NCBI GenBank assembly: GCA_977020255.1
Contig: CDROCS010000253.1
Span: 3,286,001-3,350,000 of the forward strand
Length of the DNA stretch: 64,000 bases
Source of the DNA: Obrimoposthia wandeli
Taxonomy: Eukaryota
Direction: 5' to 3'
Shown here in pieces: positions 30,995 to 43,818 of this stretch (position 1 is its first letter; each line of letters opens with the position of its first letter). The translations under genes were made by a program, and so were the position numbers. The notes beneath the pieces are model-generated. The model was given only the letters and a program-made list of their open reading frames with translations. It had not been told where the DNA came from and did no database searches.

Positions 30995-32344
30995 ATGCAA
31001 CTAACAGCAAAAGCATCACTTACTAACGCTTTACTTATTTCTATTTGTACACCTGAATTTAAAGGTGATGAAGCAACAGAATCACTTGCAGAGCTTGCGC
31101 GTTTAGTGACTACACTAGGATTTAAAGTAGTCGGCACTCAGTCGCAAAAGCAGAGTTCGACTAAAAGAGTTAATGTACTCGGTTTAGGGAAACTGGCAGA
31201 AATAGCGCATCTTACGGGTAACCAAGGTGTGGTTGAAGGCGAAGAAAATGAAGACTTATTTGAAGAAATAACGAATGAAGCAGACTTTAGCGATATCCCA
31301 TCAGATAATCTTCCGTTTGCTTGTGCTGATGTGGTGGTATTTGATTGTGATTTAAGCCCATCTCAGCTGCGAAATGTTGAGAATCAATTAGGTGTAGAGG
31401 TATTTGACCGTACTGGTATTATTATTGAAATATTTAGTCGTCATGCCCGTACCAAAACAGCGAAATTACAAGTTGAAATTGCTCGTCTTAATTATGTAGC
31501 GCCACGACTTCGTGAAACATCATGTGGTGATAAAGAACGCCAAATGGGTAAAGGCGCTGGCGAAACTACGCTAGAGTTAAATCGCCGTGCAGTACGAGAT
31601 CAATTAGCAGAGCTCAAGCGTGAGTTGGTCAGTGTTCAAGATGAGATGAAAGGCCGACGTACTCAACGTTCTGAGCTTTTTTGTGTTGCCTTGGTTGGTT
31701 ATACCAATGCGGGCAAGTCATCAATGATGCGTGCTATCACCGGTAGTGACGTTGAAGGTGAAAACAAACTTTTTGCGACGCTTGATACTACAGTTCGTGC
31801 TTTATTTCCTATCACCCAACCAAGAATATTAGTGTCAGATACTGTTGGTTTTATTAAAAAGTTACCACACGATCTAGTCGCCTCATTTCATTCAACCTTA
31901 GCAGAAGCGCAGGATGCTTCATTGTTGTTATATGTAGTCGATGCCTCGGATCCTTCGTTTCGTGCGCAACTCGATGTCGTGCACGAAGTGCTGGACGAAG
32001 TCGGTGTTGAAGACAGTAAAAAATTACTGGTACTGAACAAATCAGATCAACTTAGCATTGAGCAACAACAAGCACTGATGGAAGAATTTCCTGATGCTAT
32101 GCTGACATCAGCGCGTAATCCAGCTGATGTGAGTAAATTGCATAAATATATCGTTGAAATTGCTCAAGAAGAGATGATTGAAGAGGAGATTATTGTTCCT
32201 TATACCGCTAACGGTATCATAGGTGAAATTCGATCGAGAATGAGTGTTACTAAAGAAGAATATGAAAATAGTCATATTAAGGTAACGGTACGATCAAATG
32301 CAATTGATCTAGCAAGATTGAAAAAACGTATGCTGAGTTTATAA
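30995..32344 (+). CDS. hflX: HflX GTPase, paralog outside the hfq-hflKC context
   Basis: IIEIFSRHART…KLQVEIARL, GYTNAGKSS, LFATLDTT, DTVGFIKKLPHDLVASFHSTL, and NKSD. Confidence 0.93.
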   Translation: MQLTAKASLTNALLISICTPEFKGDEATESLAELARLVTTLGFKVVGTQSQKQSSTKRVNVLGLGKLAEIAHLTGNQGVVEGEENEDLFEEITNEADFSDIPSDNLPFACADVVVFDCDLSPSQLRNVENQLGVEVFDRTGIIIEIFSRHARTKTAKLQVEIARLNYVAPRLRETSCGDKERQMGKGAGETTLELNRRAVRDQLAELKRELVSVQDEMKGRRTQRSELFCVALVGYTNAGKSSMMRAITGSDVEGENKLFATLDTTVRALFPITQPRILVSDTVGFIKKLPHDLVASFHSTLAEAQDASLLLYVVDASDPSFRAQLDVVHEVLDEVGVEDSKKLLVLNKSDQLSIEQQQALMEEFPDAMLTSARNPADVSKLHKYIVEIAQEEMIEEEIIVPYTANGIIGEIRSRMSVTKEEYENSHIKVTVRSNAIDLARLKKRMLSL

Positions 32345-32672: not shown

Positions 32673-32688
32673 CACTCTTTAGGGGGTA
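32673..32688 (+). promoter_or_regulatory. 7-2-7 motif copy 1 (upstream of the ureohydrolase)
   Basis: CACTCTT-TA-GGGGGTA. Confidence 0.55.
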
Positions 32689-32817
32689 ACTTAAAATTTA
32701 CTAAGCTGTATATTAATAAACAAAAGGTGGTTTTCTATTTTTTGTGCTGTGTTAAGTATATAGCCAATAGAAATTCTTACTTATATTCAAATAATTATTT
32801 AAATTCATAAGGCGTAA

Positions 32818-33777
32818 ATGATGGAAAAACAACGATTTAACCAACCATTAGGTGGAAACGAAATGCCACGTTTTGGTGGCCCAGGCACCATGTTTCGCCT
32901 ACCAACTAGTGAACTCTCAAAAGATTTAGATATCGGTATTGTTGGTGTGCCTTTAGATATTGGCGCCAGTAATCGCAGTGGTACTCGTTTTGGTCCACGT
33001 TCAGTTAGAAATGAATCGGTATTAGTTCGCCCTTATGGTATGTATACGAAAGCAGCTCCTTTTGATAGTTTTCAAATTGCTGATATTGGTGATGCACCAA
33101 TTAACACATTTAACTTAGCAGACTCAATTCGCATTATTGAAAGCCATTACGATAAAATTATGGCATGTGATATTAAACCAATGACTGTTGGTGGTGATCA
33201 CACCATTAGTTTACCTATTCTTCGCGCTTTATATAAAAAGCATGGCACTATGGCACTTGTACATGTTGATGCTCATGCAGATATTAATAACTCAATGTTT
33301 GGTGAAAAAGAGTGTCACGGCACTATTTTTAGGCGCGCAATTGAAGAAGGATTAGTTGATCCTAAAAAAATGATCCAAATAGGACTGCGTGCTACCGGTT
33401 ATAGCTCTGAGGATTTTCAATGGGCTGTTGACCGTGGTGTACGCGTTGTACAAGCTGAAGAGTGTTGGTTAAAGTCTTTAGTGCCATTAATGAATGAAGT
33501 TAGAGAGGTTATTGGCGAGAAAATGCCAACGTACTTAACGTTTGATATTGACGGTATCGATCCTGCATTTGCTCCGGGTACAGGTACGCCAGAGCCAGCA
33601 GGGCTAACATCTCCGCAAGCACTGGAGATTATTCGAGGTATGTTTGGTACTAACCTAATTGGTGCTGATTTAGTGGAAGTTTCTCCGCCATATGATACTT
33701 CTGGTAATACGTCTTTACTTGCGGCGAATCTTATCTTTGAAATGCTTTGTAGCTTTCCTAGTTGTATCCGACGATAA
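32818..33777 (+). CDS. Ureohydrolase, guanidinobutyrase (GbuA)-like / agmatinase family
   Basis: The N-terminus QPLGGNEMPRFGG resembles Pseudomonas GbuA. Mn-ligand motifs GGDHT, DAHAD, CHGT and DIDGIDP are present. Confidence 0.88.
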   Translation: MMEKQRFNQPLGGNEMPRFGGPGTMFRLPTSELSKDLDIGIVGVPLDIGASNRSGTRFGPRSVRNESVLVRPYGMYTKAAPFDSFQIADIGDAPINTFNLADSIRIIESHYDKIMACDIKPMTVGGDHTISLPILRALYKKHGTMALVHVDAHADINNSMFGEKECHGTIFRRAIEEGLVDPKKMIQIGLRATGYSSEDFQWAVDRGVRVVQAEECWLKSLVPLMNEVREVIGEKMPTYLTFDIDGIDPAFAPGTGTPEPAGLTSPQALEIIRGMFGTNLIGADLVEVSPPYDTSGNTSLLAANLIFEMLCSFPSCIRR

Positions 33778-34410
33778 ATATTAGTAAGCAGCCAATTAAG
33801 CCAAAAATAGATGGGGTATATTTTTATATATGCCATTTATTTTAACTATTTGATGGGAAATATACAGTTATTACGATGTTTTCCGTTGTCGCCATATAGT
33901 TTGTCACCAGTATCTTCAATCATCGAAAAACACCTCATAAACGAACATCATATGGATACAAATTTCATTAAATTATTGGCCACTTTTTCGGGCTAAAAAA
34001 CGCCAAGGTTACGTTACTCTCAATCCCAATAGCCATATATTACTCAATTTAATGTTTGCCTCGATTTATTTCCCTTTGCAAAACAAGACTATAAATTTAA
34101 TGAAAATGATATTGGTCATTGGCTTTGGAATAAATAGTATTTTATCAAAAATTTCTTAATGTTTGATTTACATCAAACCTAAGGTTTAATGTTTAGTATT
34201 TAACCTTGGTTAAATTTGTTATTCAATAGGTACAATAAATTGCCGCGGAAGTTGATATGCAAAATAGCCTATAACTCGGTTTACACGATGACCATTTAAT
34301 TAAAAGTTTCATATAAAAACGATAGTTGGCAGAGCAGTGCGACACAAGTAGCAGGAACAAATCTTGGTACGGGTCATATTAACACTGCGCTAGTTCTTCA
34401 CATTTGCTAA

Positions 34411-35796
34411 GTGCATATCTACAAAAGGTCAATTGTTATGGGGTCACATGAGCCTGCAAGTTTCAGTTTTAATAAACCTAGAGTGCCAAGTGAAGAATAT
34501 CGAAAAAATTATAGCCAGTTAACTAAACATGAACATTTTAGTCAAAACTATGCGGGTTTGCATGCGAGGCCATTTCCTGTGCTTACCACGCCTTTTCGTA
34601 TCTCCCAGTTATGTTTTTTACATGACGAAACGGATAGTCATGAGCATGAGCTCGTTCTTTTACGTGAAATATGTCAACGCTATAGCGTTAATTTACCGGG
34701 TAAAGATGTTTCTTGCTTCTACCAAGTCTTAGGTGGATATGAAATTAGATGGGAGCGACATACTGAATTTAGTAGCTATACATTTTTGCTTAACGACAGT
34801 GATGATAAACCTTTTATATCAACACCCATTGAATTGATCCCTATTGACTGGTTACAACGTGTGCCAGGGAAGGTTATATCTGCGGTGCATATTGAAGCAT
34901 TAGACGTAAAAACCGTTGATTTAGAAAAAGACTCTTTACGGCAGTATTTTGAAGGTCAGCGCTTAATTGGCTCTACATTGCATCATGGTGAAGCCTCAAT
35001 TTATAGTGCAATGCGATTGCATAGTGATAGCTTTAATCGAATCTTGTTGGTGAATAACAGTTTAAATGAATGCCAAAATGGCAGAGTACTGAGGACTTTG
35101 CTTGAAATTGAGGCATATCGCAACATGGCGTTATTAGCGTTTCCTCTAGCACAAGACGTTAGCGCTAAAGTTAGTCAAATGGAATCACAATTAGCACGGT
35201 TACTAAAAGCGCAAAATAGCAGTAAAACCTCAACTGACGAAAAATCTCAGCTTACGGTACTTTCTGAAATGGCTGCCATTATTGCTGAATTGATTGCAAA
35301 TTCTCGTTATCGATTTGATGCAGCTACGGCTTATTACCAAATGGTTGAAAGTCGGCTAGGAGAGCTAGAAGAACGAGAAATAGATGAATTACAGACCCTA
35401 ACTTCATTCATAGAACGTCGATTATCACCCGCGTGTCGTACTGTACTAGCAGCTAAGCGCAGACTTGACGATTTAGCGTCAAGGGTTGATAGGGCAAGTG
35501 ACTTTCTTCGGACACGCATCGATATGGTCATAGAAACCCAAAACCAAGCATTACTTCAGTCAATGGATAGAAGGGCCAAAATGCAATTTAATTTGCAACA
35601 AACGGTTGAAGGATTGTCTGTGGTTGTTATGACTTATTATGTGCTTCAGCTTTTTGATTATATGTTGCAAGCAGCGGGTAGCTTTGGCTGGCATGTAAAT
35701 AAAGCCATGAGCATCTCGATACTGATGCCCATTGTTTTTGGTAGTGTTTGGTTATTAAGCCGGCGCATAAAAAAGCGCTTAAATAATATTGAATAA
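34411..35796 (+). CDS. DUF3422 family membrane-anchored protein (likely start ATG 34438)
   Basis: LHARPF, RWERHTEFSSYTF, GRVLRTLLEIEAYRNMALLAFP, QQTVEGLSVVVMTYY. Confidence 0.88.
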   Translation: MHIYKRSIVMGSHEPASFSFNKPRVPSEEYRKNYSQLTKHEHFSQNYAGLHARPFPVLTTPFRISQLCFLHDETDSHEHELVLLREICQRYSVNLPGKDVSCFYQVLGGYEIRWERHTEFSSYTFLLNDSDDKPFISTPIELIPIDWLQRVPGKVISAVHIEALDVKTVDLEKDSLRQYFEGQRLIGSTLHHGEASIYSAMRLHSDSFNRILLVNNSLNECQNGRVLRTLLEIEAYRNMALLAFPLAQDVSAKVSQMESQLARLLKAQNSSKTSTDEKSQLTVLSEMAAIIAELIANSRYRFDAATAYYQMVESRLGELEEREIDELQTLTSFIERRLSPACRTVLAAKRRLDDLASRVDRASDFLRTRIDMVIETQNQALLQSMDRRAKMQFNLQQTVEGLSVVVMTYYVLQLFDYMLQAAGSFGWHVNKAMSISILMPIVFGSVWLLSRRIKKRLNNIE

Positions 35797-35885
35797 TACA
35801 AAGGTATTATTTGTTAATCATCATAGGAAATGACAATACCTGTAACTTATTGTTAACAGGCTTTTGTGATATTAATTTTTTCACC

Positions 35886-35901
35886 TCCCCGTAGGGGGGT
35901 A
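35886..35901 (+). promoter_or_regulatory. 7-2-7 motif copy 2 (upstream of the ALDH-permease operon)
   Basis: TCCCCGT-AG-GGGGGTA. Confidence 0.5.
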
Positions 35902-35958
35902 TTTTTGTAGTCTGGACTAACTTAGCCTTAGATTCCAGTAAAATAGCAGGATAAAAGA

Positions 35959-37380
35959 ATGTATAACTATAATAAATTTTATATTAATGGTAGCTGGCAA
36001 CGCCCACACAGCGATGCAATCATTGATGTATTAAATCCGGCTAATGCTCAGCTTTGCGCACAAACGCCTAGTGCTAATAATACGGATGTAGACGCTGCAA
36101 TTGCTGCAGCTAAAACTGCGTTTCCAGCGTGGTCAGTAACGACTAGCGAAGAACGAAGTCGTTTTATTGTCGCTATCGTAGATGAAATGGAAAAGAGAAC
36201 TGATGAGTTAACTGATGCAATCACAATGACGATGGGGTGTCCTAGACATTTATCGTTAGACATTCAAGTAAAAGGCGCCATTGAAGCTTTGAGGCACTAT
36301 GCTGATATGACAACTTATGTTGAAGAGTCAAAAAGCCTAGATGGCGTGATGCAATTTAATTCTGCAGTAGGTGTCTGCATACTGATTAACCCTTGGAATT
36401 ATCCTTTATCTCAATTAATTGGCAAGCTAGGTCCGGCGTTAGCAACGGGTTGTACTGTAGTCGTTAAACCGGCAGAGCAAACGCCTTTACAAGATTTAAT
36501 ACTTGCTGAAATCATGCACAAAGTTGGTTTGCCTGCTGGTGTATTTAATGTGATTACGGGGTTTGGATCGCAAATAGGGGAACATTTATGCTCACACCCT
36601 GATGTTGATATGGTGTCATTTACGGGCTCTACTGGTGCTGGTATTAAAGTAGCCCAAGCAGCATCAAGTACCGTGAAGCGAGTCTGTCAGGAGTTAGGGG
36701 GTAAATCACCTTATATTATTACCGAAGATGCAGATTTATCAGCGGCAGTTCGTTATGGTGTTGAAGATGTCATGATTAATTCAGGACAAACATGTTGTGC
36801 CTTAACACGTATGTTAGTCCCTAATAGTTTATATCAACAAGCAATTGACATTGCTAAATCAGTTGCTGAAGAAAATATTGTCGGCGATCCGCAAAACGAA
36901 AACACTACCATGGGGCCGTTAAGCTCAGCCTTACAACAAAAACGAGTTTTAGAATATATCAATATAGGTATTAAAGAAGGTGCTGAAATTGTAACCGGTG
37001 GAACAGAATTACCTACCGAATTACAACAAGGTGCTTACGTAATGCCTACCATTTTTACTAATGTTACCAATGACATGACCATTGCTCGGGAAGAGATATT
37101 TGGTCCTGTGCTTTGCATAATCCCTTATTCAGATGAACAAGAAGCAATTCAAATTGCCAATGACACTGTATTTGGATTGTCATCAGGTGTATTTGCTAAA
37201 GACAAAACGTCGGCGTTAAAGATTGCTCGCAAAATTCGTGCAGGTCAATCTTATGTTCAAGGTACCTATTTTACTTCACATGCACCCTTTGGCGGTTTTA
37301 AACAATCAGGTAATGGGCGTGAGTGGGGCAGAGAAGGCTTGCGTGAATTTGTCGAAGTTCAGTCAATTATTATTGAATAG
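35959..37380 (+). CDS. NAD-dependent aldehyde dehydrogenase
   Basis: INPWNYP, KPAEQTP, SFTGSTGAG, QELGGKSP, catalytic NSGQTC, EEIFGPV, and PFGGFKQSG. Confidence 0.95.
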   Translation: MYNYNKFYINGSWQRPHSDAIIDVLNPANAQLCAQTPSANNTDVDAAIAAAKTAFPAWSVTTSEERSRFIVAIVDEMEKRTDELTDAITMTMGCPRHLSLDIQVKGAIEALRHYADMTTYVEESKSLDGVMQFNSAVGVCILINPWNYPLSQLIGKLGPALATGCTVVVKPAEQTPLQDLILAEIMHKVGLPAGVFNVITGFGSQIGEHLCSHPDVDMVSFTGSTGAGIKVAQAASSTVKRVCQELGGKSPYIITEDADLSAAVRYGVEDVMINSGQTCCALTRMLVPNSLYQQAIDIAKSVAEENIVGDPQNENTTMGPLSSALQQKRVLEYINIGIKEGAEIVTGGTELPTELQQGAYVMPTIFTNVTNDMTIAREEIFGPVLCIIPYSDEQEAIQIANDTVFGLSSGVFAKDKTSALKIARKIRAGQSYVQGTYFTSHAPFGGFKQSGNGREWGREGLREFVEVQSIIIE

Positions 37381-37389
37381 GGGAAAGTT

Positions 37390-38793
37390 ATGAGTGAAGT
37401 ACATTTACATGAGAAAACACTTGGCAAACGGGATATATTTTTATTTTGTATCTCAGCCGTTTTATTACTAGATACATTGGCTGCCGGTGCAGTGATGGGC
37501 CCAGCGGTTATTTTTTGGTGGGTTATATTAACAATATTCTTTTTGGTTCCTTTTGGTGCCATCAGTACTGAACTCGGCTCTGCCTACCCCGAACAAGGGG
37601 GAATTTATGCATGGGTTAAACGTGCATATGGGCAAAAAATGGCATCTCGCATTAGTTGGTACTATTGGGCCAATGTCGCCGTGTGGATCCCCGCTATCTT
37701 TATTTTGTTTGCGGGTGTTTTTTCACAAATGTTTTATCCAGAGATGTCTCTTACTGCACAAATAGTCCTAGGTGTTGTGCTTATTTGGGTAACGGTATTA
37801 GTTAATGTTGTTGCCTTAAATATCGGTAAATGGATCCCAAATATTGGTGCAGCGGCTAAATTAATTATTTTCCTTTTATTGATTATTGGCGGCGTCTCAT
37901 ATGGTATGGAACACGGAATAGCCAATGAGTTTACGCTTGCTACCATGATCCCAAGTATAGAGAATGGTGGTTTGAGCTTACAATATTTACCTGCTGTTGT
38001 TTACGGTATGTTAGGTTTTGAATTAGCCAGTGCTAGTAGTGCAGAAATGACAAATCCAAGAAAAGATTTACCGAAAGCTGTTTTTTCTTCTATTGCGGTT
38101 GTCGTGGGTGCCTATGTCTTAGCCACCACTGCAATTCTTATTGCACAACCTGCAGCAGATGTTGATGTTGTTGATGGTTTAATGGACACATTAACAATGT
38201 TATTTGGCGGAACGCCTTTAGGTGATGCTTTTGTTGTTGCTTTAGGTGTTGGCGCGCTTTATACCTTCTTTTCAAACGGGGCAACTTGGGCGATGGGAGC
38301 TAACCGCGCTGCCGCTGAAGCTGCAATTGATAAAGAGCTTCCTGCTGTTTTTGCTAAAGAGTCAAAACATGGTACGCCAGTAGGTGCAGCTGTTTTATTA
38401 GGTATTTCAGCATCTATACTATTGATTTTGTACGGCCTGATGGCGGGTAATAACGAAGATTTATTCTGGTCACTATTTGCCTTTAGTGGTGTTATTTTTA
38501 TGCTACCTTACGTGGCTATGTGTACGGCATTTGTAAAAATACGAGAGCAACATATCGGGATAAATGGAAAAATAGCAGAAGATGGTTTTTTTAGATTTCC
38601 GGGCAGTCCTCGCGTTGCAAAATTCTTCGCTTATTTATGTGCAGCCATCTTATCTGTAACTATCGTATTATTTATCTATGTTCCAGGAGAAGGTATAACT
38701 TGGGAAGTGCTTTGGGGAGCATTAGCAGTAATATTTATCGGTGAAGTAGTGACGTACCACAGTCATAAGAAAATGACATTTGCGCATAACTAA
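37390..38793 (+). CDS. APC-family amine/amino-acid permease (AguD/PotE-like)
   Basis: ELGSAYPEQGGIYAWVKRAYG and GFELASASSAEMTNPRKDLPKA. About 12 TM segments; 9 nt after the ALDH stop. Confidence 0.9.
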   Translation: MSEVHLHEKTLGKRDIFLFCISAVLLLDTLAAGAVMGPAVIFWWVILTIFFLVPFGAISTELGSAYPEQGGIYAWVKRAYGQKMASRISWYYWANVAVWIPAIFILFAGVFSQMFYPEMSLTAQIVLGVVLIWVTVLVNVVALNIGKWIPNIGAAAKLIIFLLLIIGGVSYGMEHGIANEFTLATMIPSIENGGLSLQYLPAVVYGMLGFELASASSAEMTNPRKDLPKAVFSSIAVVVGAYVLATTAILIAQPAADVDVVDGLMDTLTMLFGGTPLGDAFVVALGVGALYTFFSNGATWAMGANRAAAEAAIDKELPAVFAKESKHGTPVGAAVLLGISASILLILYGLMAGNNEDLFWSLFAFSGVIFMLPYVAMCTAFVKIREQHIGINGKIAEDGFFRFPGSPRVAKFFAYLCAAILSVTIVLFIYVPGEGITWEVLWGALAVIFIGEVVTYHSHKKMTFAHN

Positions 38794-38818
38794 ACGGTTA
38801 AAAAATCGGTATTAAATT

Positions 38819-38852
38819 AAAACAGCGATCATTTTGAGCCGCTGTTTTTTTT
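38819..38852 (+). terminator. Intrinsic terminator after the permease
   Basis: AAAACAGCG-loop-CGCTGTTTT followed by a T run. Confidence 0.75.
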
Positions 38853-38902
38853 GTTTTTATATCTTATGATCAAATAAATAAATTTGCTGGGTTGTTTATT
38901 CA

Positions 38903-39727
38903 ATGAAGTTAGAAAAATTTAGTTTGGCATTAATCGAATTATCACAAAATGTTGGCACCGAATTCTTTTACCCAAAACTGAAAGATGTATTTGAGAGCAC
39001 TTTAGGTTTTGATGAATTACTGGTACTGCAACTTAATAAAGTAGCAGATGCGAAGCTTTACTATCGCTATGGTGTTGATGGCATTAAAAATAGGCTTCAA
39101 GGTGAAGATGCTTGGAAGTATTTAACACGGTTGTATGTGCTAGATCCCTTTTATCGAATCTTTGCGGATAAAAATAAGTTTGGTTTTTATGAATTAGATG
39201 AAATAGCACCGGATGAGTTTTCAAATATTTATGATTCCTATTTTAATTTTCTTAAATTATCTGATGAAGTGGGTTTCTTATTTCCAATCGATGACGATAA
39301 TTGTTTGCATATCGATTTATCCAGGTTTGGTGAAAACAACAAGTTTTCAGTACAAGAGAAAGCTTTGCTTAACCAGCTATACCTGCCTTTACAAATATTG
39401 TGTACGAAACATTTATCTATTACGGATGATGATAATGAAACAACCAACTCAAATGTAGAAAATGTGCTTATTAACTTTGGTAAGGACATATTAACGAAAA
39501 AAGAATACCAGGTGTGCCAGCTGTTGCTTCAAGGAAACTCGACTAAAGCGATAGGTAACATCATGGAAATTGGTTATGAAACCGTAAAAATGCATAAAAA
39601 AAATATTTATGGGAAAACATTTTTATCTAGTCAATCAGAGTTATTAGCTTTGTTTATTGAAATTTTACAACAAAATGCTTTAGATAAAGATATCGACCAT
39701 TTATCTGTCTATATGAAGCAATTATAA
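38903..39727 (+). CDS. LuxR-family regulator with a GAF-like ligand domain
   Basis: N-terminal YVLDPFY segment and C-terminal HTH (LTKKEYQVCQLLLQGNSTKAIG…ETVKMHKKNIYGK). Confidence 0.88.
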   Translation: MKLEKFSLALIELSQNVGTEFFYPKLKDVFESTLGFDELLVLQLNKVADAKLYYRYGVDGIKNRLQGEDAWKYLTRLYVLDPFYRIFADKNKFGFYELDEIAPDEFSNIYDSYFNFLKLSDEVGFLFPIDDDNCLHIDLSRFGENNKFSVQEKALLNQLYLPLQILCTKHLSITDDDNETTNSNVENVLINFGKDILTKKEYQVCQLLLQGNSTKAIGNIMEIGYETVKMHKKNIYGKTFLSSQSELLALFIEILQQNALDKDIDHLSVYMKQL

Positions 39728-39748
39728 ATGTTTATATTACTCAATAGC

Positions 39749-39764
39749 TACCTATTAGGGGGTA
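39749..39764 (+). promoter_or_regulatory. 7-2-7 motif copy 3 (upstream of the FAD oxidoreductase)
   Basis: TACCTAT-TA-GGGGGTA inside the imperfect palindrome GCTACCTATTAGGGGGTAGC. Confidence 0.6.
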
Positions 39765-39901
39765 GCGAAAAGCGCTAATAAGGTTAACGTAGTACTACAT
39801 TATAAATGGTGTGAGTTAAAAGTTACCAACGAAATCATTGACGAAATTGTTCTGATAAATAATTTTTAGATGGGTTTTATTCTCACCAAAATACGTTTTA
39901 C

Positions 39902-41314
39902 TTGGAGATAAGTACTGTGACTAATCGCGCTGAATTAGCATTACAAAACACAAAGTTTACCCCTTTTTGGTTGGATAACCCAAATCGTCCGGCAGCTGAA
40001 AAAACACTTGAATCACATATCGAAACTGATTTGTTAATCGTTGGTAGTGGTTTTACTGGCTTATGGACAGCAGTTCAAGCAAAAGAGCAAAACCCTGACC
40101 GTAACGTGATTGTTATTGAAGCTAATACCGCTGCAATAGGTGCATCTGGTAGACCCGGTGCCATTCTTTCTACTTCGTTAATGCATGGCATGGAAAACTC
40201 TAATCGTTTATTTGAAAAAGAAATGGATGAACTCGAGCGTCTGGGTAAAGACAACATGGACCAGTTTCGCGCAACCATTGAAAAGTACAGCATTGATTGC
40301 GATATAGAATGGAATGGAGAATTAACAGTAGCGGTTGGGAAACATGGTGTTGCTGATATTGAAGCTGAACATAAACTTTATGTTAAGTTTGGCCATGATG
40401 CACACTTACTGAATAAAGAAGCAGTACAAAAAGAGATAAATTCACCCATGTTTGAGGGCGGATTATGGTCTAAAAAGCGTTCAGGTACTATTCACCCGGC
40501 TAAAATGGCTTGGGGGCTTAAACGTGTTGCGAAAGAGCTTGGTGTTACTTTTTATGAAAACACCCCGATGCTAACAAGCAAATCGAAAGGCAACCAAGTT
40601 ATTGTTTATACACCACATGGTAATGTACTTGCGAATAAAGTTATTTTAGCGACTAATGCCTTTACTCAGCATAAAAAGAAGATCAGTCGCCGAGTCGCTG
40701 CTATTCGTGATCGTATTATAATGACGGAGCCTTTGAGTGAACAGCAGCTAAAAGAACTTGGTTGGAAAAACCGTCAAGGTATTTATGATACTCGTACTCA
40801 ATTAAATTATATGCGTTTAACTAAAGATAACCGTGTATTATTTGGCGGCCGTTTGGGTTATTTCTTTGATAATGATACCGACCCAGAGCATGATAAAACG
40901 CCTGAGCCTTTTATTCGTTTATTAGATGCACTTTACCAAACACTTCCTGTTTTAAAAGATATAAAAGTATCTCACGCTTGGAGTGGACCTATTGCGCTAA
41001 CTACGCGTATGGCTGTTCATTATCAGTATTTCCATGGTGGTAAAATGGTTTATGCTGGTGGGTATTCAGGCTTTGGTGTAACGGCAAGCCGTTTCGCTTC
41101 GCGTGTTGCCTTGGCAATCGTTGATGATGTTGATATTCCTGAGCGTAAGCTAGAATTTGCTAAAACAGTACCTGCTTGGATCCCACCAGAGCCGTTTCGT
41201 TGGATTGGCGCGAAGATCACTATGTATGCTCTCGATACCTGTGATGAAAAGGGCGGTTGGAGAATTCCTTGGTTAAAAATAGTGGATAAAATGGGCTTCC
41301 CATTAAAGCCGTAA
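39902..41314 (+). CDS. FAD-dependent amine oxidoreductase (DAO/PuuB-OrdL-like; likely start GTG 39917)
   Basis: IVGSGFTGLWTA, GASGRPG, IHPAKMAWGL, VILATNAF, AWSGPI, and YSGFGVTASR. Confidence 0.88.
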   Translation: MEISTVTNRAELALQNTKFTPFWLDNPNRPAAEKTLESHIETDLLIVGSGFTGLWTAVQAKEQNPDRNVIVIEANTAAIGASGRPGAILSTSLMHGMENSNRLFEKEMDELERLGKDNMDQFRATIEKYSIDCDIEWNGELTVAVGKHGVADIEAEHKLYVKFGHDAHLLNKEAVQKEINSPMFEGGLWSKKRSGTIHPAKMAWGLKRVAKELGVTFYENTPMLTSKSKGNQVIVYTPHGNVLANKVILATNAFTQHKKKISRRVAAIRDRIIMTEPLSEQQLKELGWKNRQGIYDTRTQLNYMRLTKDNRVLFGGRLGYFFDNDTDPEHDKTPEPFIRLLDALYQTLPVLKDIKVSHAWSGPIALTTRMAVHYQYFHGGKMVYAGGYSGFGVTASRFASRVALAIVDDVDIPERKLEFAKTVPAWIPPEPFRWIGAKITMYALDTCDEKGGWRIPWLKIVDKMGFPLKP

Positions 41315-41721: not shown

Positions 41722-43818
41722 ATGAAATCAAGCAATACTGACAATGCACTGACCCAACAATATGTTCTCAATGATTCGCTTCACCAATTGTTTGATGCAG
41801 TAAATGTTGTTTCTGTGCAGGGATACGATGAAGAGCGGCGAGTGATCTATTGGAATGTCGGTAGTGAATTACTTTATGGCTACAATCAAGAAGAAGCATT
41901 AGGGCAAAAACTAGAAGATTTAATTATCCCTGAGCCTATGCGTGAGTTAGTTATTGCTGCACATAGTGATTGGATCAAACGAGGGATAGAAATCCCTGCT
42001 TCAGAGGTAAGATTACGCCATAAAAATGGTAGTGATGTCAATGTGTTTTCAAGTCATGCGCTGTTTACTAATCAATATAATAAAAAGCAAATGTATTGTA
42101 TTGACGTTAATTTAGCTGATGTTAAACATGCCCAATCCCAAGTACTATTTAAAGAGCATATGCTTGAGACAATCTTTGATGCAATACCTGATTTATTTTT
42201 CTTGATGGAGGTAGATGGCACTATTGTTGATTATCATACGGGTGACCAAAAGAACCTCTACGTTTCACCACATCAGTTTATTGGTAAACGTATGACAGAT
42301 ATACTACCTGATGAGGTAATCAGTAAATTTCAAACCCATGTTGAGAAAATATTAAAACAAGAGGGGATGATAACTTTTGAATATGAGCTAAGTATGCCTC
42401 ATGGATTGGTGCATTTTGAGGCAAGAATGAGTTATTTGCCTGAGTATAATCAAATAGTATTGATAATTCGTGACGTTAGTGAGCAATATAAATCTGCTGA
42501 AATAATAAAGCATCAGGCTTACTTTGATACCTTAACCTCATTGCCAAATCGCTTCTTAGCACTCGACCGTTTATCACAAATGCTGACGGAAGCTGAAAGA
42601 AATAATGATAAAACAGCTGTGCTTTTTCTGGATTTAGATGATTTTAAGAAAATTAATGATTCATTGGGTCATGAAATAGGGGATAAAGTACTAATACAAT
42701 CAGCCAAAAGATTAAACCAAGTATTACGAGAAGGCGATACTGTTGGTCGCTTAGGTGGAGATGAGTTTATTGTGCTATTACGAGGGATAACTGAACATCA
42801 TGATGCGTTAGTTATCACTGAAAATATACTTAAACGTTTTAGGGATCCTTTTATAATCGATGGTAGGGAATTAATACTGACGTTGAGTATTGGTGTGGCT
42901 ATTTACCCTGAAAATGGTCGTTGTGCCTCTGATTTGTTGCGAAATGCCGATACGGCAATGTATCAAGCAAAAGATTTAGGACGTAATACCTTTTCGTTTT
43001 TTTCTAAAAAAATGAATACTATGATGCTCCGCCGTTTTGAAATTGAAGAGCAAATGCATGGGGCTTTGGAGCGTAATGAATTTGAACTATATTACCAACC
43101 TCAATTTGACGTTAAAAGCCGACAAATTACGGGCGTAGAAGCTCTGTTGCGTTGGTATAATTCAGCCCTAGGTAATGTAACACCAGATGAGTTTATTCCA
43201 ATTGCTGAACACACGGGTCTAATTGTACCTATTGGCCAGTTTGTTATTAAGCAAGCACTCAATTTTTTAAATGAATGGCAAAACGTTTATCAGCAAAAAT
43301 TTACAATGGCCGTTAATCTGTCTCCTCGCCAATTCAGAGATGCAGAGTTACTTAGCTTTATCAAAACCTCCCTTAGTGATGCAAATGTTAGTGCTGAAAA
43401 TTTAGAACTTGAAATCACTGAGGGTGTATTAATGAGTGGTCAATCACATATCCATAATGCCTTAGTTGAAATTAATGAACTAGGAATAAAGTTATCAATG
43501 GATGATTTTGGTACTGGGTACTCATCCCTAAGTTATTTAAGACAATATGCTTTTGATGTACTGAAAATAGATAGAAGCTTTATTAATGGCATACCACTAA
43601 ACAAGGCAGACTGTAAGTTAGTTAATGCAATCATAGCAATGGCACATAGTTTAGGGCTAACGGTCGTGGCTGAAGGTGTTGAAACGATTGAGCAACTTAC
43701 TTTATTAGATGAGTTGGACTGTGACTTAGTACAAGGGTATTATTTTAGTAAACCTATACCAGCAAAACAGCTACTTGATTTTGCAGCTCACTACAAATTA
43801 TCACTGTTAAATAAATAG
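41722..43818 (+). CDS. PAS-PAS-GGDEF-EAL c-di-GMP enzyme
   Basis: Two PAS domains, REGD I-site plus GGDEF, EAL (GVEALLRW, DDFGTGYSS, EGVE). Confidence 0.93.
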   Translation: MKSSNTDNALTQQYVLNDSLHQLFDAVNVVSVQGYDEERRVIYWNVGSELLYGYNQEEALGQKLEDLIIPEPMRELVIAAHSDWIKRGIEIPASEVRLRHKNGSDVNVFSSHALFTNQYNKKQMYCIDVNLADVKHAQSQVLFKEHMLETIFDAIPDLFFLMEVDGTIVDYHTGDQKNLYVSPHQFIGKRMTDILPDEVISKFQTHVEKILKQEGMITFEYELSMPHGLVHFEARMSYLPEYNQIVLIIRDVSEQYKSAEIIKHQAYFDTLTSLPNRFLALDRLSQMLTEAERNNDKTAVLFLDLDDFKKINDSLGHEIGDKVLIQSAKRLNQVLREGDTVGRLGGDEFIVLLRGITEHHDALVITENILKRFRDPFIIDGRELILTLSIGVAIYPENGRCASDLLRNADTAMYQAKDLGRNTFSFFSKKMNTMMLRRFEIEEQMHGALERNEFELYYQPQFDVKSRQITGVEALLRWYNSALGNVTPDEFIPIAEHTGLIVPIGQFVIKQALNFLNEWQNVYQQKFTMAVNLSPRQFRDAELLSFIKTSLSDANVSAENLELEITEGVLMSGQSHIHNALVEINELGIKLSMDDFGTGYSSLSYLRQYAFDVLKIDRSFINGIPLNKADCKLVNAIIAMAHSLGLTVVAEGVETIEQLTLLDELDCDLVQGYYFSKPIPAKQLLDFAAHYKLSLLNK

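What the first reader, a model, noticed from the sequence alone, without database searches (positions are those of the whole stretch)
32673..41314. Candidate LuxR-controlled regulon for oxidative agmatine/guanidino-amine catabolism, with a shared 7-2-7 operator
Seen: three separate transcription units each carry one copy of the same motif upstream: the ureohydrolase (CACTCTT-TA-GGGGGTA, 32673), ALDH plus permease (TCCCCGT-AG-GGGGGTA, 35886) and the FAD oxidoreductase (TACCTAT-TA-GGGGGTA, 39749). A LuxR-HTH gene sits in the middle of the cluster. Known: NarL/LuxR-fold HTHs bind 7-2-7 TAC…GTA sites; GbuA hydrolyses 4-guanidinobutyrate; AguD-like APC permeases move agmatine. Inference: uptake, then flavin-dependent oxidative deamination to 4-guanidinobutyraldehyde, then ALDH, then ureohydrolase giving GABA plus urea. 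This route needs no glutamylation and no agmatine deiminase, and the co-regulation would link four enzymes whose substrates are otherwise unassigned.
Basis: partly seen in the sequence, partly recalled or inferred. Interest (0 to 1): 0.72.

Follow-up and report, generated by a model that had tools for sequence, protein, structure and literature searches.

The report
LuxR-controlled guanidino-amine (agmatine) catabolic regulon
A marine Colwellia-like bacterium carries a small gene set, switched by one local LuxR-type regulator through a conserved C-run/G-run DNA site, that most likely burns agmatine to GABA using a flavoenzyme, an aldehyde dehydrogenase and a guanidinobutyrase: a well-supported prediction, but not yet tested at the bench.

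Summary
The strict pattern CCCC-N4-GGGGGTA occurs once on the bacterial contig C253 and once per genome in five relatives, each time upstream of the ALDH gene. In 12 orthologous loci the site is kept upstream of the flavoenzyme gene in all 12. It is also kept, exact or as a variant, in 9 of the 10 loci where an orthologous ALDH and its upstream DNA are held, and upstream of the ureohydrolase in all 8 loci that have one nearby. More distant loci with the regulator (Veronia, Maricurvus, Aestuariirhabdus, Microbulbifer) keep C-run/G-run inverted repeats.

The regulator is a LuxR "solo" whose sensor domain resembles VqsR. The ureohydrolase is a GbuA (guanidinobutyrase) orthologue, and the flavoenzyme is a PuuB homologue. 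In two relatives gabD and gabT sit between gbuA and the ALDH gene. Clusters without GbuA carry a DDAH/ADI-like enzyme plus a carbamoylase instead, so the substrate probably bears a guanidino group.

The most likely route is agmatine to 4-guanidinobutanal to 4-guanidinobutyrate to GABA plus urea. Not shown are the ligand, the binding, the sign of regulation and the enzyme specificities. "7-2-7" fits only one site, and "AguD-like" is unsupported. The chemistry is known from fungi and Sinorhizobium, but this enzyme and regulator set is new.

The parts
32673..32688 (+). Operator-like site upstream of gbuA (CACTCTTTAGGGGGTA; degenerate left arm)
   Evidence: C-run/G-run sites lie upstream of gbuA in all 8 loci where gbuA is nearby. 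Colwellia carries a weaker CACCC-TCTTTT-GGGTA.
32818..33777 (+). gbuA, guanidinobutyrase orthologue (arginase fold, 319 aa)
   Evidence: PF00491. It scores 467 bits full-length to P. aeruginosa GbuA 3NIO, 310 to GpuA and about 190 to agmatinases.
34411..35796 (+). DUF3422 protein; conserved neighbour of unknown role, membership in the regulon not shown
   Evidence: PF11902. It lies upstream of ALDH, or of the permease gene in L012, in L001-L006 and L012. No operator was seen upstream.
35885..35901 (+). Operator-like site upstream of ALDH-permease operon (CTCCCC-GTAGG-GGGGTA)
   Evidence: It is the only CCCC-N4-GGGGGTA on contig C253 and in each of five relatives, and is conserved in alignment A2. 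It also scores as a terminator-like hairpin.
35914..35931 (+). Second conserved block (GGACTAACTTAGCCTTAG); possibly a weak -35, with TAAAAT 16 nt downstream
   Evidence: Alignment A2; my reading of the sequence. Unresolved.
35959..37380 (+). NAD(P)-dependent aldehyde dehydrogenase, candidate 4-guanidinobutanal dehydrogenase
   Evidence: PF00171. No NCBIfam equivalog is reached. It is 35% identical to PuuC. An orthologue lies next to the permease gene in 11 of 12 loci.
37390..38793 (+). APC-superfamily permease, 9 nt after ALDH (same operon); candidate substrate importer or antiporter
   Evidence: PF13520. Only distant similarity to GadC, TyrP and AdiC and to PuuP. A terminator-like hairpin follows at about 38822-38856 (my reading).
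38903..39727 (+). LuxR-family solo regulator: VqsR-like ligand-binding domain plus GerE HTH (274 aa)
   Evidence: GerE at residues 195-247. Residues 72-165 hit the VqsR LBD 5XHX, E 1e-8. AlphaFold model pLDDT 86. Best fold match VqsR LBD, TM 0.82, then RhlR, SdiA, CviR, QscR and TraR.
39749..39764 (+). Operator-like site upstream of the flavoenzyme gene (TACCTAT-TA-GGGGGTA, 7-2-7)
   Evidence: Present in all 12 orthologous loci. TTAGGGGGTA is invariant in alignment A1.
39782..39798 (+). Second conserved block (GGTTAACGTAGTACTAC)
   Evidence: Alignment A1. Unresolved.
39917..41314 (+). PuuB-like FAD-dependent amine oxidoreductase (DAO family), candidate agmatine oxidase/dehydrogenase; start revised to GTG 39917 (465 aa)
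   Evidence: PF01266. 31% identical to E. coli PuuB over 391 aa. Orthologues of 60-87% identity, mostly 464-472 aa, carry generic names apart from one 'gamma-glutamylputrescine oxidoreductase'. RBS GGAG lies 9 nt before the GTG.

Best explanation
The region is a small regulon of three regulated transcription units: gbuA, ALDH-permease, and the flavoenzyme gene. The LuxR-family regulator encoded between them controls all three. This regulator has a VqsR-type ligand-binding domain and a GerE HTH. As a dimer it would bind an imperfect inverted repeat, about [T/C][A/T]CCCC-N4-5-GGGGGTA, placed upstream of each unit.

The inferred pathway takes up a guanidino-amine, most likely agmatine. A PuuB-like flavoprotein oxidises its free primary amine to 4-guanidinobutanal. 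The ALDH oxidises that to 4-guanidinobutyrate, and GbuA hydrolyses it to GABA plus urea. GABA then goes to succinate through GabT and GabD. In effect this is a Puu-type pathway in which the natural guanidino group replaces gamma-glutamylation as the blocking group.

Shown here: the site exists, is rare genome-wide and is conserved with the genes; the family assignments; the gene linkage.

Inferred: that this LuxR binds the site; that the ligand is agmatine or an intermediate; the order of steps; the substrate. The position of the ALDH site, centred near -58 from a putative promoter, hints at activation, but this is weak.
For: **Cis-element**
- The sites are real.
- The strict pattern is unique on contig C253 and in each of five related genomes.
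- The relaxed pattern clusters 2-3 of 4-7 genome hits inside the locus.
- The site is kept upstream of the flavoenzyme gene in 12 of 12 loci. It is kept, exact or as a variant, upstream of ALDH in 9 of the 10 loci with an orthologous ALDH and held upstream DNA, and upstream of gbuA in 8 of 8, while the flanks diverge.
- Distant LuxR-bearing loci keep related repeats: Veronia TACCCTAATCGGGGTA, Aestuariirhabdus TACCC-ATAGA-GGGTA, Maricurvus TCCCCCGATAAGGGGA, Microbulbifer TCACCC-ATTG-GGGTGA.
- Two loci without the regulator (Cocleimonas, with LysR; Litoribrevibacter) lack the repeat.

**Regulator**
- GerE HTH plus a VqsR-like LBD.
- VqsR itself binds a GC-rich inverted repeat, TCGCC-N8-GGCGA (PMC3592444).

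**Pathway**
- GbuA orthology and PuuB homology.
- gbuA-gabD-gabT lies next to ALDH-permease-LuxR-DAO in L001 and L007.
- An arginase-family gene, ALDH and DAO form one operon with a PotF-type ABC transporter in Cocleimonas. An arginase-family gene sits next to DAO in Aestuariirhabdus and follows DAO directly in L008.
- DAO and GbuA orthologues co-occur in 4 genomes, against 3 with DAO only and 1 with GbuA only, among 401 sampled. Fisher p = 1.6e-7, not corrected for phylogeny.
- GbuA-less clusters carry an orthologous pentein (DDAH/ADI-like) plus carbamoylase pair.
- No PuuA or PuuD homologue lies among the cluster genes. No aguA, speA or ureC was found on contig C253.
Against: - No binding, expression or enzyme data exist. 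No RNA run holds the locus.
- The left arm and its spacing vary, so the site is not a strict palindrome, and the gbuA site in the window has almost no left arm.
- The ALDH site can also fold as a terminator-like hairpin followed by a T-run after the DUF3422 gene.
- A second conserved block accompanies each site and is unexplained.
- One locus without an adjacent LuxR (L028, Motiliproteus) still has two TACCC-N6-GGGTA-type repeats upstream of its flavoenzyme gene. The binder therefore need not be encoded next door.
- The flavoenzyme is only 31% identical to PuuB and has no characterised close relative or solved structure, so its substrate is open.
- The ALDH and the permease are not diagnostic of any substrate.
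- Gene content alone does not fix whether the guanidino group is removed first or last.
Confidence: 0.6

Rival explanations
1. Same regulon, but the guanidino group is removed first. The ureohydrolase acts as an agmatinase, giving putrescine plus urea. The flavoenzyme then oxidises putrescine to 4-aminobutanal, and the ALDH (PatD-like) makes GABA.
For: The protein passes the NCBIfam agmatinase model TIGR01230 (202 bits, cut-off 174). The ALDH scores 418 bits to the aminobutyraldehyde dehydrogenase subfamily, below its cut-off. Gene content is equally compatible with this order, and the end product, GABA, is the same.
Against: The ureohydrolase is far closer to characterised GbuA (467 bits, full length) than to any agmatinase (about 190 bits). 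PuuB-type enzymes act on N-blocked putrescine, by established knowledge of the Puu pathway. Free 4-aminobutanal cyclises, which is the usual rationale for blocking one amine.
Confidence: 0.12
2. Same regulon, but the substrate is a different amine. It could be another guanidino-amine such as homoagmatine or 3-guanidinopropylamine. Alternatively the ALDH-permease-LuxR-flavoenzyme core handles an unrelated amine and gbuA is only a co-regulated neighbour.
For: The flavoenzyme's best NCBIfam hits are an aminophosphonate oxidoreductase model and pipecolate oxidase, both far below cut-off. The permease resembles GadC and TyrP antiporters. L012 shows neither gbuA nor the pentein pair within 10 kb, by my gene-set search and ORF look only. 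The flavoenzyme gene stands alone in some genomes.
Against: Two unrelated guanidino-removing modules (GbuA, or pentein plus carbamoylase) are recruited to the same cluster. GABA genes are embedded in it. GbuA is closest to the C4-specific enzyme rather than to GpuA.
Confidence: 0.13
3. The flavoenzyme is an arginine oxidase or dehydrogenase that makes 2-ketoarginine. This reaches 4-guanidinobutyrate by decarboxylation, as in the arginine oxidase/dehydrogenase pathway of pseudomonads.
For: It belongs to the DAO family (PF01266), which includes D-arginine dehydrogenase. In P. aeruginosa, GbuA belongs to that pathway (Nakada and Itoh 2002, as cited in PMC10833137).
Against: No 2-ketoarginine decarboxylase lies in any of the clusters examined. 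No PDB amino-acid oxidase or dehydrogenase scores better than E 3e-4, whereas PuuB aligns at 31% identity, E 6e-45. An ALDH would be superfluous if H2O2-driven decarboxylation gave the acid directly.
Confidence: 0.05
4. The motif is not the operator of this LuxR. It is bound by another GerE/NarL-type factor (for example NarP, whose 7-2-7 consensus TACYYMT-NN-AKRRGTA it resembles), or it is a structural element such as a terminator or a REP-like hairpin.
For: The flavoenzyme site matches the NarL heptamer rule (established knowledge; sequence). The ALDH site scores as a terminator. L028 has similar repeats with no LuxR nearby.
Against: The strict pattern is unique per genome and sits only in this cluster, so there is no sign of a global regulon. 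The motif is present with the LuxR gene in all 16 LuxR-bearing loci, across several families. The invariant part is a specific sequence (GGGGGTA), not a covarying stem. The gbuA and flavoenzyme sites lack hairpin-plus-T-run features. The ALDH site persists in L007, 220 nt after gabT and with no DUF3422 gene.
Confidence: 0.08

Closest known systems
Agmatine to 4-guanidinobutanal to 4-guanidinobutyrate to GABA route of Aspergillus niger (Kumar, Saragadam and Punekar 2015, as cited in PMC10833137) and of Sinorhizobium meliloti (PMC7268258)
   Same: Same proposed intermediates and the same final ureohydrolase step. S. meliloti has ALDHs specific for 4-guanidinobutanal and a ureohydrolase acting on 4-guanidinobutanoate.
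   Different: In S. meliloti the first step is done by transaminases; in the fungus it is an amine oxidase, by my recollection of Kumar 2015, which I could not read. Here the candidate is a PuuB-family FAD enzyme. The genes here are clustered and share one operator and a LuxR-type regulator.
E. coli Puu pathway (PuuP, PuuA, PuuB, PuuC, PuuD, PuuE; repressor PuuR)
   Same: Permease, PuuB-type flavin amine oxidase (31% identity), ALDH (35% identity to PuuC), removal of the blocking group, GABA as product (annotation).
   Different: There is no gamma-glutamylation (no PuuA) and no PuuD. A guanidino group would be the built-in block, removed by GbuA. The regulator is LuxR-type rather than PuuR. 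The permease is not PuuP-like (23% identity over 188 aa).
P. aeruginosa GbuA/GbuR (guanidinobutyrase of the arginine dehydrogenase pathway)
   Same: The ureohydrolase aligns full-length with GbuA at 467 bits.
   Different: In P. aeruginosa gbuA is controlled by the LysR-type GbuR (my own knowledge of Nakada and Itoh 2002) and is fed from 2-ketoarginine. Here it carries the LuxR-type site and sits with an amine oxidase.
VqsR of P. aeruginosa and other LuxR solos
   Same: Two-domain architecture. LBD sequence match E 1e-8 and fold TM 0.82. VqsR also binds a GC-rich inverted repeat of similar span, TCGCC-N8-GGCGA (PMC3592444).
   Different: Only about 21% identity in the LBD. The half-site differs (TACCCC/GGGGTA). 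The targets are catabolic genes next door rather than quorum-sensing genes. No Autoind_bind Pfam match.
NarL/NarP 7-2-7 heptamer sites (TACYYMT-NN-AKRRGTA)
   Same: The flavoenzyme site TACCTAT-TA-GGGGGTA obeys the heptamer rule, and the HTH is of the same GerE fold.
   Different: The regulator has no receiver domain. The other two sites deviate in the left arm and in spacing. The site is local to one cluster, not part of a global nitrate regulon.

Membership tests
Guanidinobutyrase (GbuA) within the ureohydrolase superfamily | Arginase fold with conserved Mn-binding motifs | tested here: met
   PF00491, 298 bits. The GGDH, DAHAD, DIDGIDP and EVSPPYD blocks align identically with 3NIO.
Guanidinobutyrase (GbuA) within the ureohydrolase superfamily | Closer to characterised GbuA than to GpuA, agmatinase, arginase or HutG | tested here: met
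   467 bits to GbuA 3NIO, 310 to GpuA, 226 to proclavaminate amidinohydrolase, at most 196 to agmatinases.
Guanidinobutyrase (GbuA) within the ureohydrolase superfamily | Hydrolyses 4-guanidinobutyrate and not agmatine | not testable with these tools
   Needs an enzyme assay.
PuuB-type FAD amine oxidoreductases (DAO family) | DAO/FAD domain and homology to gamma-glutamylputrescine oxidase | tested here: met
   PF01266, 184 bits. 31% identity over 391 aa to E. coli PuuB, E 6e-45.
PuuB-type FAD amine oxidoreductases (DAO family) | Orthology to PuuB, meaning the same substrate and a genomic context with PuuA and PuuD | tested here: not met
   No PuuA or PuuD homologue among the cluster genes. Identity is only 31%. 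This is a separate, well-conserved subfamily with generic names apart from one 'gamma-glutamylputrescine oxidoreductase'.
LuxR-type ligand-responsive regulators (quorum-sensing receptor architecture; VqsR subgroup) | C-terminal GerE HTH | tested here: met
   PF00196, 45 bits, residues 195-247.
LuxR-type ligand-responsive regulators (quorum-sensing receptor architecture; VqsR subgroup) | N-terminal alpha/beta ligand-binding domain of the LuxR/VqsR fold | tested here: met
   phmmer to 5XHX, E 1e-8. Model pLDDT 86. Foldseek gives VqsR LBD TM 0.82, followed by full-length RhlR, SdiA, CviR, QscR and TraR.
LuxR-type ligand-responsive regulators (quorum-sensing receptor architecture; VqsR subgroup) | Acyl-homoserine-lactone binding (Autoind_bind signature) | tested here: not met
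   No PF03472 hit. It should therefore be treated as a non-AHL LuxR solo.
NarL/FixJ response regulators with 7-2-7 sites | Phospho-receiver domain | tested here: not met
   No Response_reg domain. The N-terminus has the VqsR-like fold.
NarL/FixJ response regulators with 7-2-7 sites | Inverted TACYYMT heptamers with a 2-bp spacer | tested here: inconclusive
   Met by the flavoenzyme site only. In the ALDH and gbuA sites and in orthologues the left arm shifts by 1-2 nt.
Operator of the adjacent regulator (local regulon) | Conserved upstream of the co-localised genes and rare elsewhere in the genome | tested here: met
Operator of the adjacent regulator (local regulon) | Physical binding by the regulator and a ligand response | not testable with these tools
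   Needs EMSA, footprinting or reporter assays.

The most novel reading that the evidence does not exclude
An uncharacterised PuuB-related flavoprotein subfamily, which search results place in several marine Gammaproteobacteria genera, is a bacterial agmatine (guanidino-amine) oxidase or dehydrogenase. It heads a modular pathway whose last step is done either by GbuA or by a so far undescribed pentein "guanidinobutyrate deiminase" plus an M20 carbamoylase. The whole pathway is switched by a VqsR-type LuxR solo that senses a guanidino compound, which would give the first ligand class and a defined operator for VqsR-like sensor domains.
Probability: 0.4. Interest if true: 0.7.

Novelty: new variant of a known kind. 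Interest (0 to 1): 0.55.

Why it matters
If correct, it assigns substrates to four poorly annotated proteins (the flavoenzyme, ALDH, permease and regulator) that recur across marine Gammaproteobacteria. It adds a third bacterial way of degrading agmatine, beside the agmatinase and agmatine deiminase routes. It also points to a second, undescribed way of removing the guanidino group from guanidinobutyrate, by a pentein enzyme plus a carbamoylase.

It would also give a concrete, testable operator and a ligand hypothesis for the VqsR-like branch of LuxR solos; I know of no ligand established for VqsR, and I did not check this. Agmatine and other guanidino compounds are nitrogen-rich, so the route may bear on nitrogen cycling in cold marine and ice habitats; a small share of the locus's sampled words occurs in one ice-metagenome run. 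The chemistry itself is not new, and the finding is a well-supported prediction rather than a surprise.

Tried and rejected
- **Whole-assembly count of TAGGGGGTA**. Uninformative, because G000 is a 1.35 Gb multi-organism assembly. I used a stricter pattern whose listing reached contig C253. A relaxed pattern on the own contig could not be listed, so relaxed counts come from five relatives only.
- **A script holding a typed list of sites.** I re-ran the analysis with a short regular expression only. No position weight matrix was built.
- **Class-level search with the LuxR protein**. It found only paralogues of 28-35% identity in a sparse sample and gave no extra orthologues.
- **PDB sequence search for the flavoenzyme**. 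Nothing better than E 3e-4, so I made no structure-based inference about its substrate.
- **Sigma-70 scan**. Fewer promoter-like sites than in shuffles. Reading by eye gives a plausible weak -35/-10 for ALDH but none for the flavoenzyme gene, and sigma-54 spacing does not fit. Activation versus repression stays open.
- **Terminator or REP reading of the motif.** Rejected as a general explanation; see the rivals.
- **Sequencing runs**. Contigs only and no RNA run.
- **Literature searches** for a bacterial agmatine oxidase or dehydrogenase, or a LuxR linked to guanidinobutyrase. They found no description of this system. The Kumar 2015 paper could not be opened.

Full report
**Setting**

The window is G000:C253:3286001-3350000. 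G000 is a 1.35 Gb assembly of 6912 contigs, and many of its other contigs carry intact bacterial speA, aguA and ureC genes. It therefore holds many organisms. C253 is a bacterial contig of at least 3.35 Mb, and the closest relatives of its genes are Colwellia, Pseudoalteromonas pernae, Cognaticolwellia and Psychromonas.

**Genes**

| Coordinates | Gene |
|---|---|
| 30995-32344 | hflX, followed by a strong terminator-like hairpin |
| 32818-33777 | arginase-family ureohydrolase |
| 34411-35796 | DUF3422 |
| 35959-37380 | aldehyde dehydrogenase (ALDH) |
| 37390-38793 | APC permease, 9 nt after ALDH |
| 38903-39727 | 274-aa protein with a C-terminal GerE/LuxR HTH |
| 39902/39917-41314 | DAO-family FAD oxidoreductase |
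| 41722-43818 | PAS-GGDEF-EAL protein |

The flavoenzyme gene most likely starts at GTG 39917. A GGAG lies 9 nt upstream, and the product would be 465 aa, like most close orthologues.

Yes. The three sites are at the stated coordinates. AGGGGGTA occurs four times in the window against 0.77 expected. Two exact TAGGGGGTA copies (2366 and 36695) lie inside genes and have no C-run to their left, so I take them as chance.

The stricter form CCCC-N4-GGGGGTA has a single hit on the whole of contig C253, at C253:3321887, which is window 35887, the ALDH site. In five related genomes of 3.8-5.2 Mb it has exactly one hit each, always the ALDH-upstream site, and the reversed control gives 0-2 per genome. 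The relaxed form CC-N5-GGGGGTA gives 4-7 hits per genome, no more than its control. Even so, 2-3 of those hits fall within the roughly 10-kb cluster in every genome.

**Conservation in orthologues**

The search for related loci with the LuxR protein returned 12 loci with 57-75% identity.

- The core ALDH-permease-LuxR-flavoenzyme arrangement is present in all 12. In L012 the ALDH lies downstream and is more divergent.
- The ureohydrolase lies within 10 kb in 8 of them, and in L008 it directly follows the flavoenzyme gene.
- A GGGGGTA site with a C-run to its left lies between LuxR and the flavoenzyme gene in all 12 loci.
- Upstream of ALDH the site is exact in L001-L007 and L011 and a variant (GGGGTG or GGGGGTG) in L008 and L009.
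- Upstream of the ureohydrolase there is a site in all 8 loci. The four Colwellia genomes carry a weaker CACCC-TCTTTT-GGGTA and L006 carries CTCCCC-GTAT-GGGGAATA.
- In alignments of the intergenic regions the invariant columns concentrate on TTAGGGGGTA, while the surrounding sequence has diverged to 39-53% column identity.

More distant loci were reached through flavoenzyme homologues. Those that keep a GerE gene also keep C-run/G-run inverted repeats in the relevant intergenic regions: Veronia TACCCTAATCGGGGTA, Aestuariirhabdus TACCC-ATAGA-GGGTA, Maricurvus TCCCCCGATAAGGGGA and Microbulbifer TCACCC-ATTG-GGGTGA.

Two loci without the regulator lack the repeat: Cocleimonas, which has a LysR gene instead, and Litoribrevibacter. 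One locus without an adjacent regulator, L028 (Motiliproteus), nevertheless has two such repeats.

The best general description is an imperfect inverted repeat, [T/C][A/T]CCCC-N4-5-GGGGGTA.

**The regulator**

Besides GerE, residues 72-165 match the ligand-binding domain of P. aeruginosa VqsR (5XHX) at E 1e-8. PMC9144697 identifies 5XHX as VqsR.

An AlphaFold model built on 14 homologues has mean pLDDT 86 and pTM 0.84. Its best structural match is the VqsR LBD (TM 0.82 by target, rmsd 3.0 Å). Full-length RhlR, SdiA, CviR, QscR and TraR follow.

There is no Autoind_bind hit and no receiver domain. It is therefore a non-AHL LuxR solo with a sensor domain. VqsR is reported to bind TCGCC-N8-GGCGA (PMC3592444), a GC-rich inverted repeat of similar span.

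**The enzymes**

- **Ureohydrolase.** It aligns end to end with P. aeruginosa guanidinobutyrase (3NIO) at 467 bits. It scores 310 bits against guanidinopropionase and at most 196 against agmatinases. I call it a GbuA orthologue.
- **Flavoenzyme.** It is 31% identical over 391 residues to E. coli gamma-glutamylputrescine oxidase PuuB. It has no solved relative better than E 3e-4. Its orthologues, 60-87% identical across many marine Gammaproteobacteria, carry generic names, apart from one annotated as gamma-glutamylputrescine oxidoreductase.
- **ALDH.** It reaches no NCBIfam equivalog and is 35% identical to PuuC.
- **Permease.** It is only distantly like GadC, TyrP, AdiC and PuuP. "AguD-like" is not supported.

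**Context that fixes the chemistry**

1. In L001 and L007 the order is gbuA, gabD (SSADH model above cut-off), gabT (GABA transaminase model above cut-off), then ALDH-permease-LuxR-flavoenzyme. In L008 an ALDH and a class-III aminotransferase of gabD/gabT size lie downstream. This points to GABA as the product.
2. In Cocleimonas an arginase-family gene, ALDH and the flavoenzyme gene form one operon behind a PotF-type ABC transporter and a LysR regulator. In Aestuariirhabdus an arginase-family gene and the flavoenzyme gene are adjacent. The enzyme trio is therefore linked independently of the regulator.
3. In a 401-genome sample of the order, flavoenzyme orthologues occur in 7 genomes and GbuA orthologues in 5, with 4 genomes holding both, and in those 4 the two genes are adjacent. 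Fisher p is 1.6e-7, without correction for relatedness.
4. The clade that lacks GbuA is L009-L011. The L009 genome is a 3.59 Mb chromosome whose only ureohydrolase is 30% identical and 42 kb away. In L009, directly after the flavoenzyme gene, come a pentein-superfamily DDAH/ADI-like protein with a C-terminal GGGGIHCM and an M20 hydantoinase/carbamoylase-family amidase (TIGR01879, 396 bits). The Microbulbifer cluster has the same pair, 69% and 62% identical. A guanidino-to-ureido-to-amine module thus replaces GbuA, which argues independently that the substrate carries a guanidino group.

**Mechanism I consider most likely**

Agmatine is imported. The PuuB-like flavoprotein oxidises its free primary amine to 4-guanidinobutanal. 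The ALDH gives 4-guanidinobutyrate. GbuA gives GABA plus urea. GabT and GabD take GABA to succinate. The guanidino group plays the blocking role that gamma-glutamylation plays in the Puu pathway.

No PuuA or PuuD homologue is in the cluster. No aguA, speA or ureC was found on C253 with the thresholds used. The agmatine would then be exogenous, and the fate of the urea is open. C253 may not be the whole genome.

The LuxR solo would sense agmatine or an intermediate and bind the three sites. For ALDH, a weak -35 (CTAACT) and a TAAAAT 16 nt further on would place the operator centre near -58, an activator-like position. I could not define a promoter for the flavoenzyme gene, so I leave the sign of regulation open.

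**Rivals**

- **Agmatinase first, then putrescine oxidation.** Compatible with gene content, but disfavoured by the GbuA similarity.
- **Another amine.** Not excluded, because the flavoenzyme is uncharacterised.
- **An arginine oxidase route.** No 2-ketoarginine decarboxylase was seen in any cluster.
- **Terminator reading.** The ALDH site scores as a hairpin plus T-run. Against this, the invariant element is a specific sequence rather than a covarying stem, the other sites lack the hairpin, and the site persists in L007 far from any upstream gene end.
- **Another NarL-type factor.** Disfavoured by the genome-wide uniqueness of the site and its co-occurrence with this LuxR gene in all 16 LuxR-bearing loci.

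**Known or new?**

The agmatine to 4-guanidinobutyrate to GABA route is described for Aspergillus niger (Kumar et al. 2015, cited in PMC10833137; I could not open the paper itself). In Sinorhizobium meliloti it runs with transaminases, 4-guanidinobutanal-specific ALDHs and a ureohydrolase (PMC7268258).

My searches found no bacterial PuuB-type agmatine oxidase, no LuxR linked to guanidinobutyrase and no description of this operator. The library does not cover most subscription journals. I therefore class the finding as a new variant of a known kind: known chemistry, with a new enzyme assignment, regulator and operator, plus a possible new guanidinobutyrate deiminase module.

**Not resolved**

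- A second conserved block (consensus GGYTAACWTAGTMYTA) lies 13-19 nt downstream of each operator.
- The role of DUF3422 is unknown.
- The ligand is unknown.
- No RNA data exist for the locus.

The earlier notes of the scan near this place concern other features and did not bear on this finding.

Noticed in passing
L009:12421-14565; L022:853-3127: GbuA-less versions of the cluster carry an orthologous pair next to the flavoenzyme gene. One is a pentein DDAH/ADI-like enzyme (303 aa, C-terminal GGGG[I/V]HCM). The other is an M20 hydantoinase/carbamoylase-family amidase. Together they are a candidate two-step guanidinobutyrate (or agmatine) deiminase route that I did not find described in my literature searches.
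   Followed up: partly
window 35914-35931 and 39782-39798: A second conserved block (consensus GGYTAACWTAGTMYTA) lies 13-19 nt downstream of the operators in both promoters and in relatives. It could be the core promoter or a second protein site.
   Followed up: partly
L006:16960-19416; L001:12676-13422: In relatives the same operator also precedes outer-membrane proteins: a TonB-dependent receptor in Cognaticolwellia and a Gcw_chp protein in Pseudoalteromonas pernae. TonB receptors are also embedded in the Microbulbifer and Maricurvus clusters.
   Followed up: partly
window 34411-35796: A DUF3422 gene sits upstream of ALDH (or of the permease gene in L012) in the window and in 7 of 12 related loci. 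It has no recognisable operator and no known function.
   Followed up: no
L029:7360-7900: Thalassotalea fonticola has about nine tandem repeats of about 80 bp upstream of its flavoenzyme orthologue, each holding ATCCCC-N10-GGGGGAT or a variant.
   Followed up: no
G000 as a whole (contigs other than C253): The 1.35 Gb assembly holds many contigs with intact bacterial speA, aguA and ureC genes. It is therefore a multi-organism (metagenome-like or holobiont) assembly, and whole-assembly counts do not describe the bacterium of this window.
   Followed up: partly
window 41722-43818; L023:12721-14796: A PAS-GGDEF-EAL protein follows the flavoenzyme gene in the window and, 1.3 kb downstream, in Veronia. 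Colwellia loci have a 34%-identical homologue about 5 kb away on the other strand. This may be coincidence.
   Followed up: no
window 39902-39919: The longest ORF of the flavoenzyme gene starts at TTG 39902. GTG 39917, with GGAG 9 nt upstream, gives the 465 aa seen in most close orthologues.
   Followed up: yes
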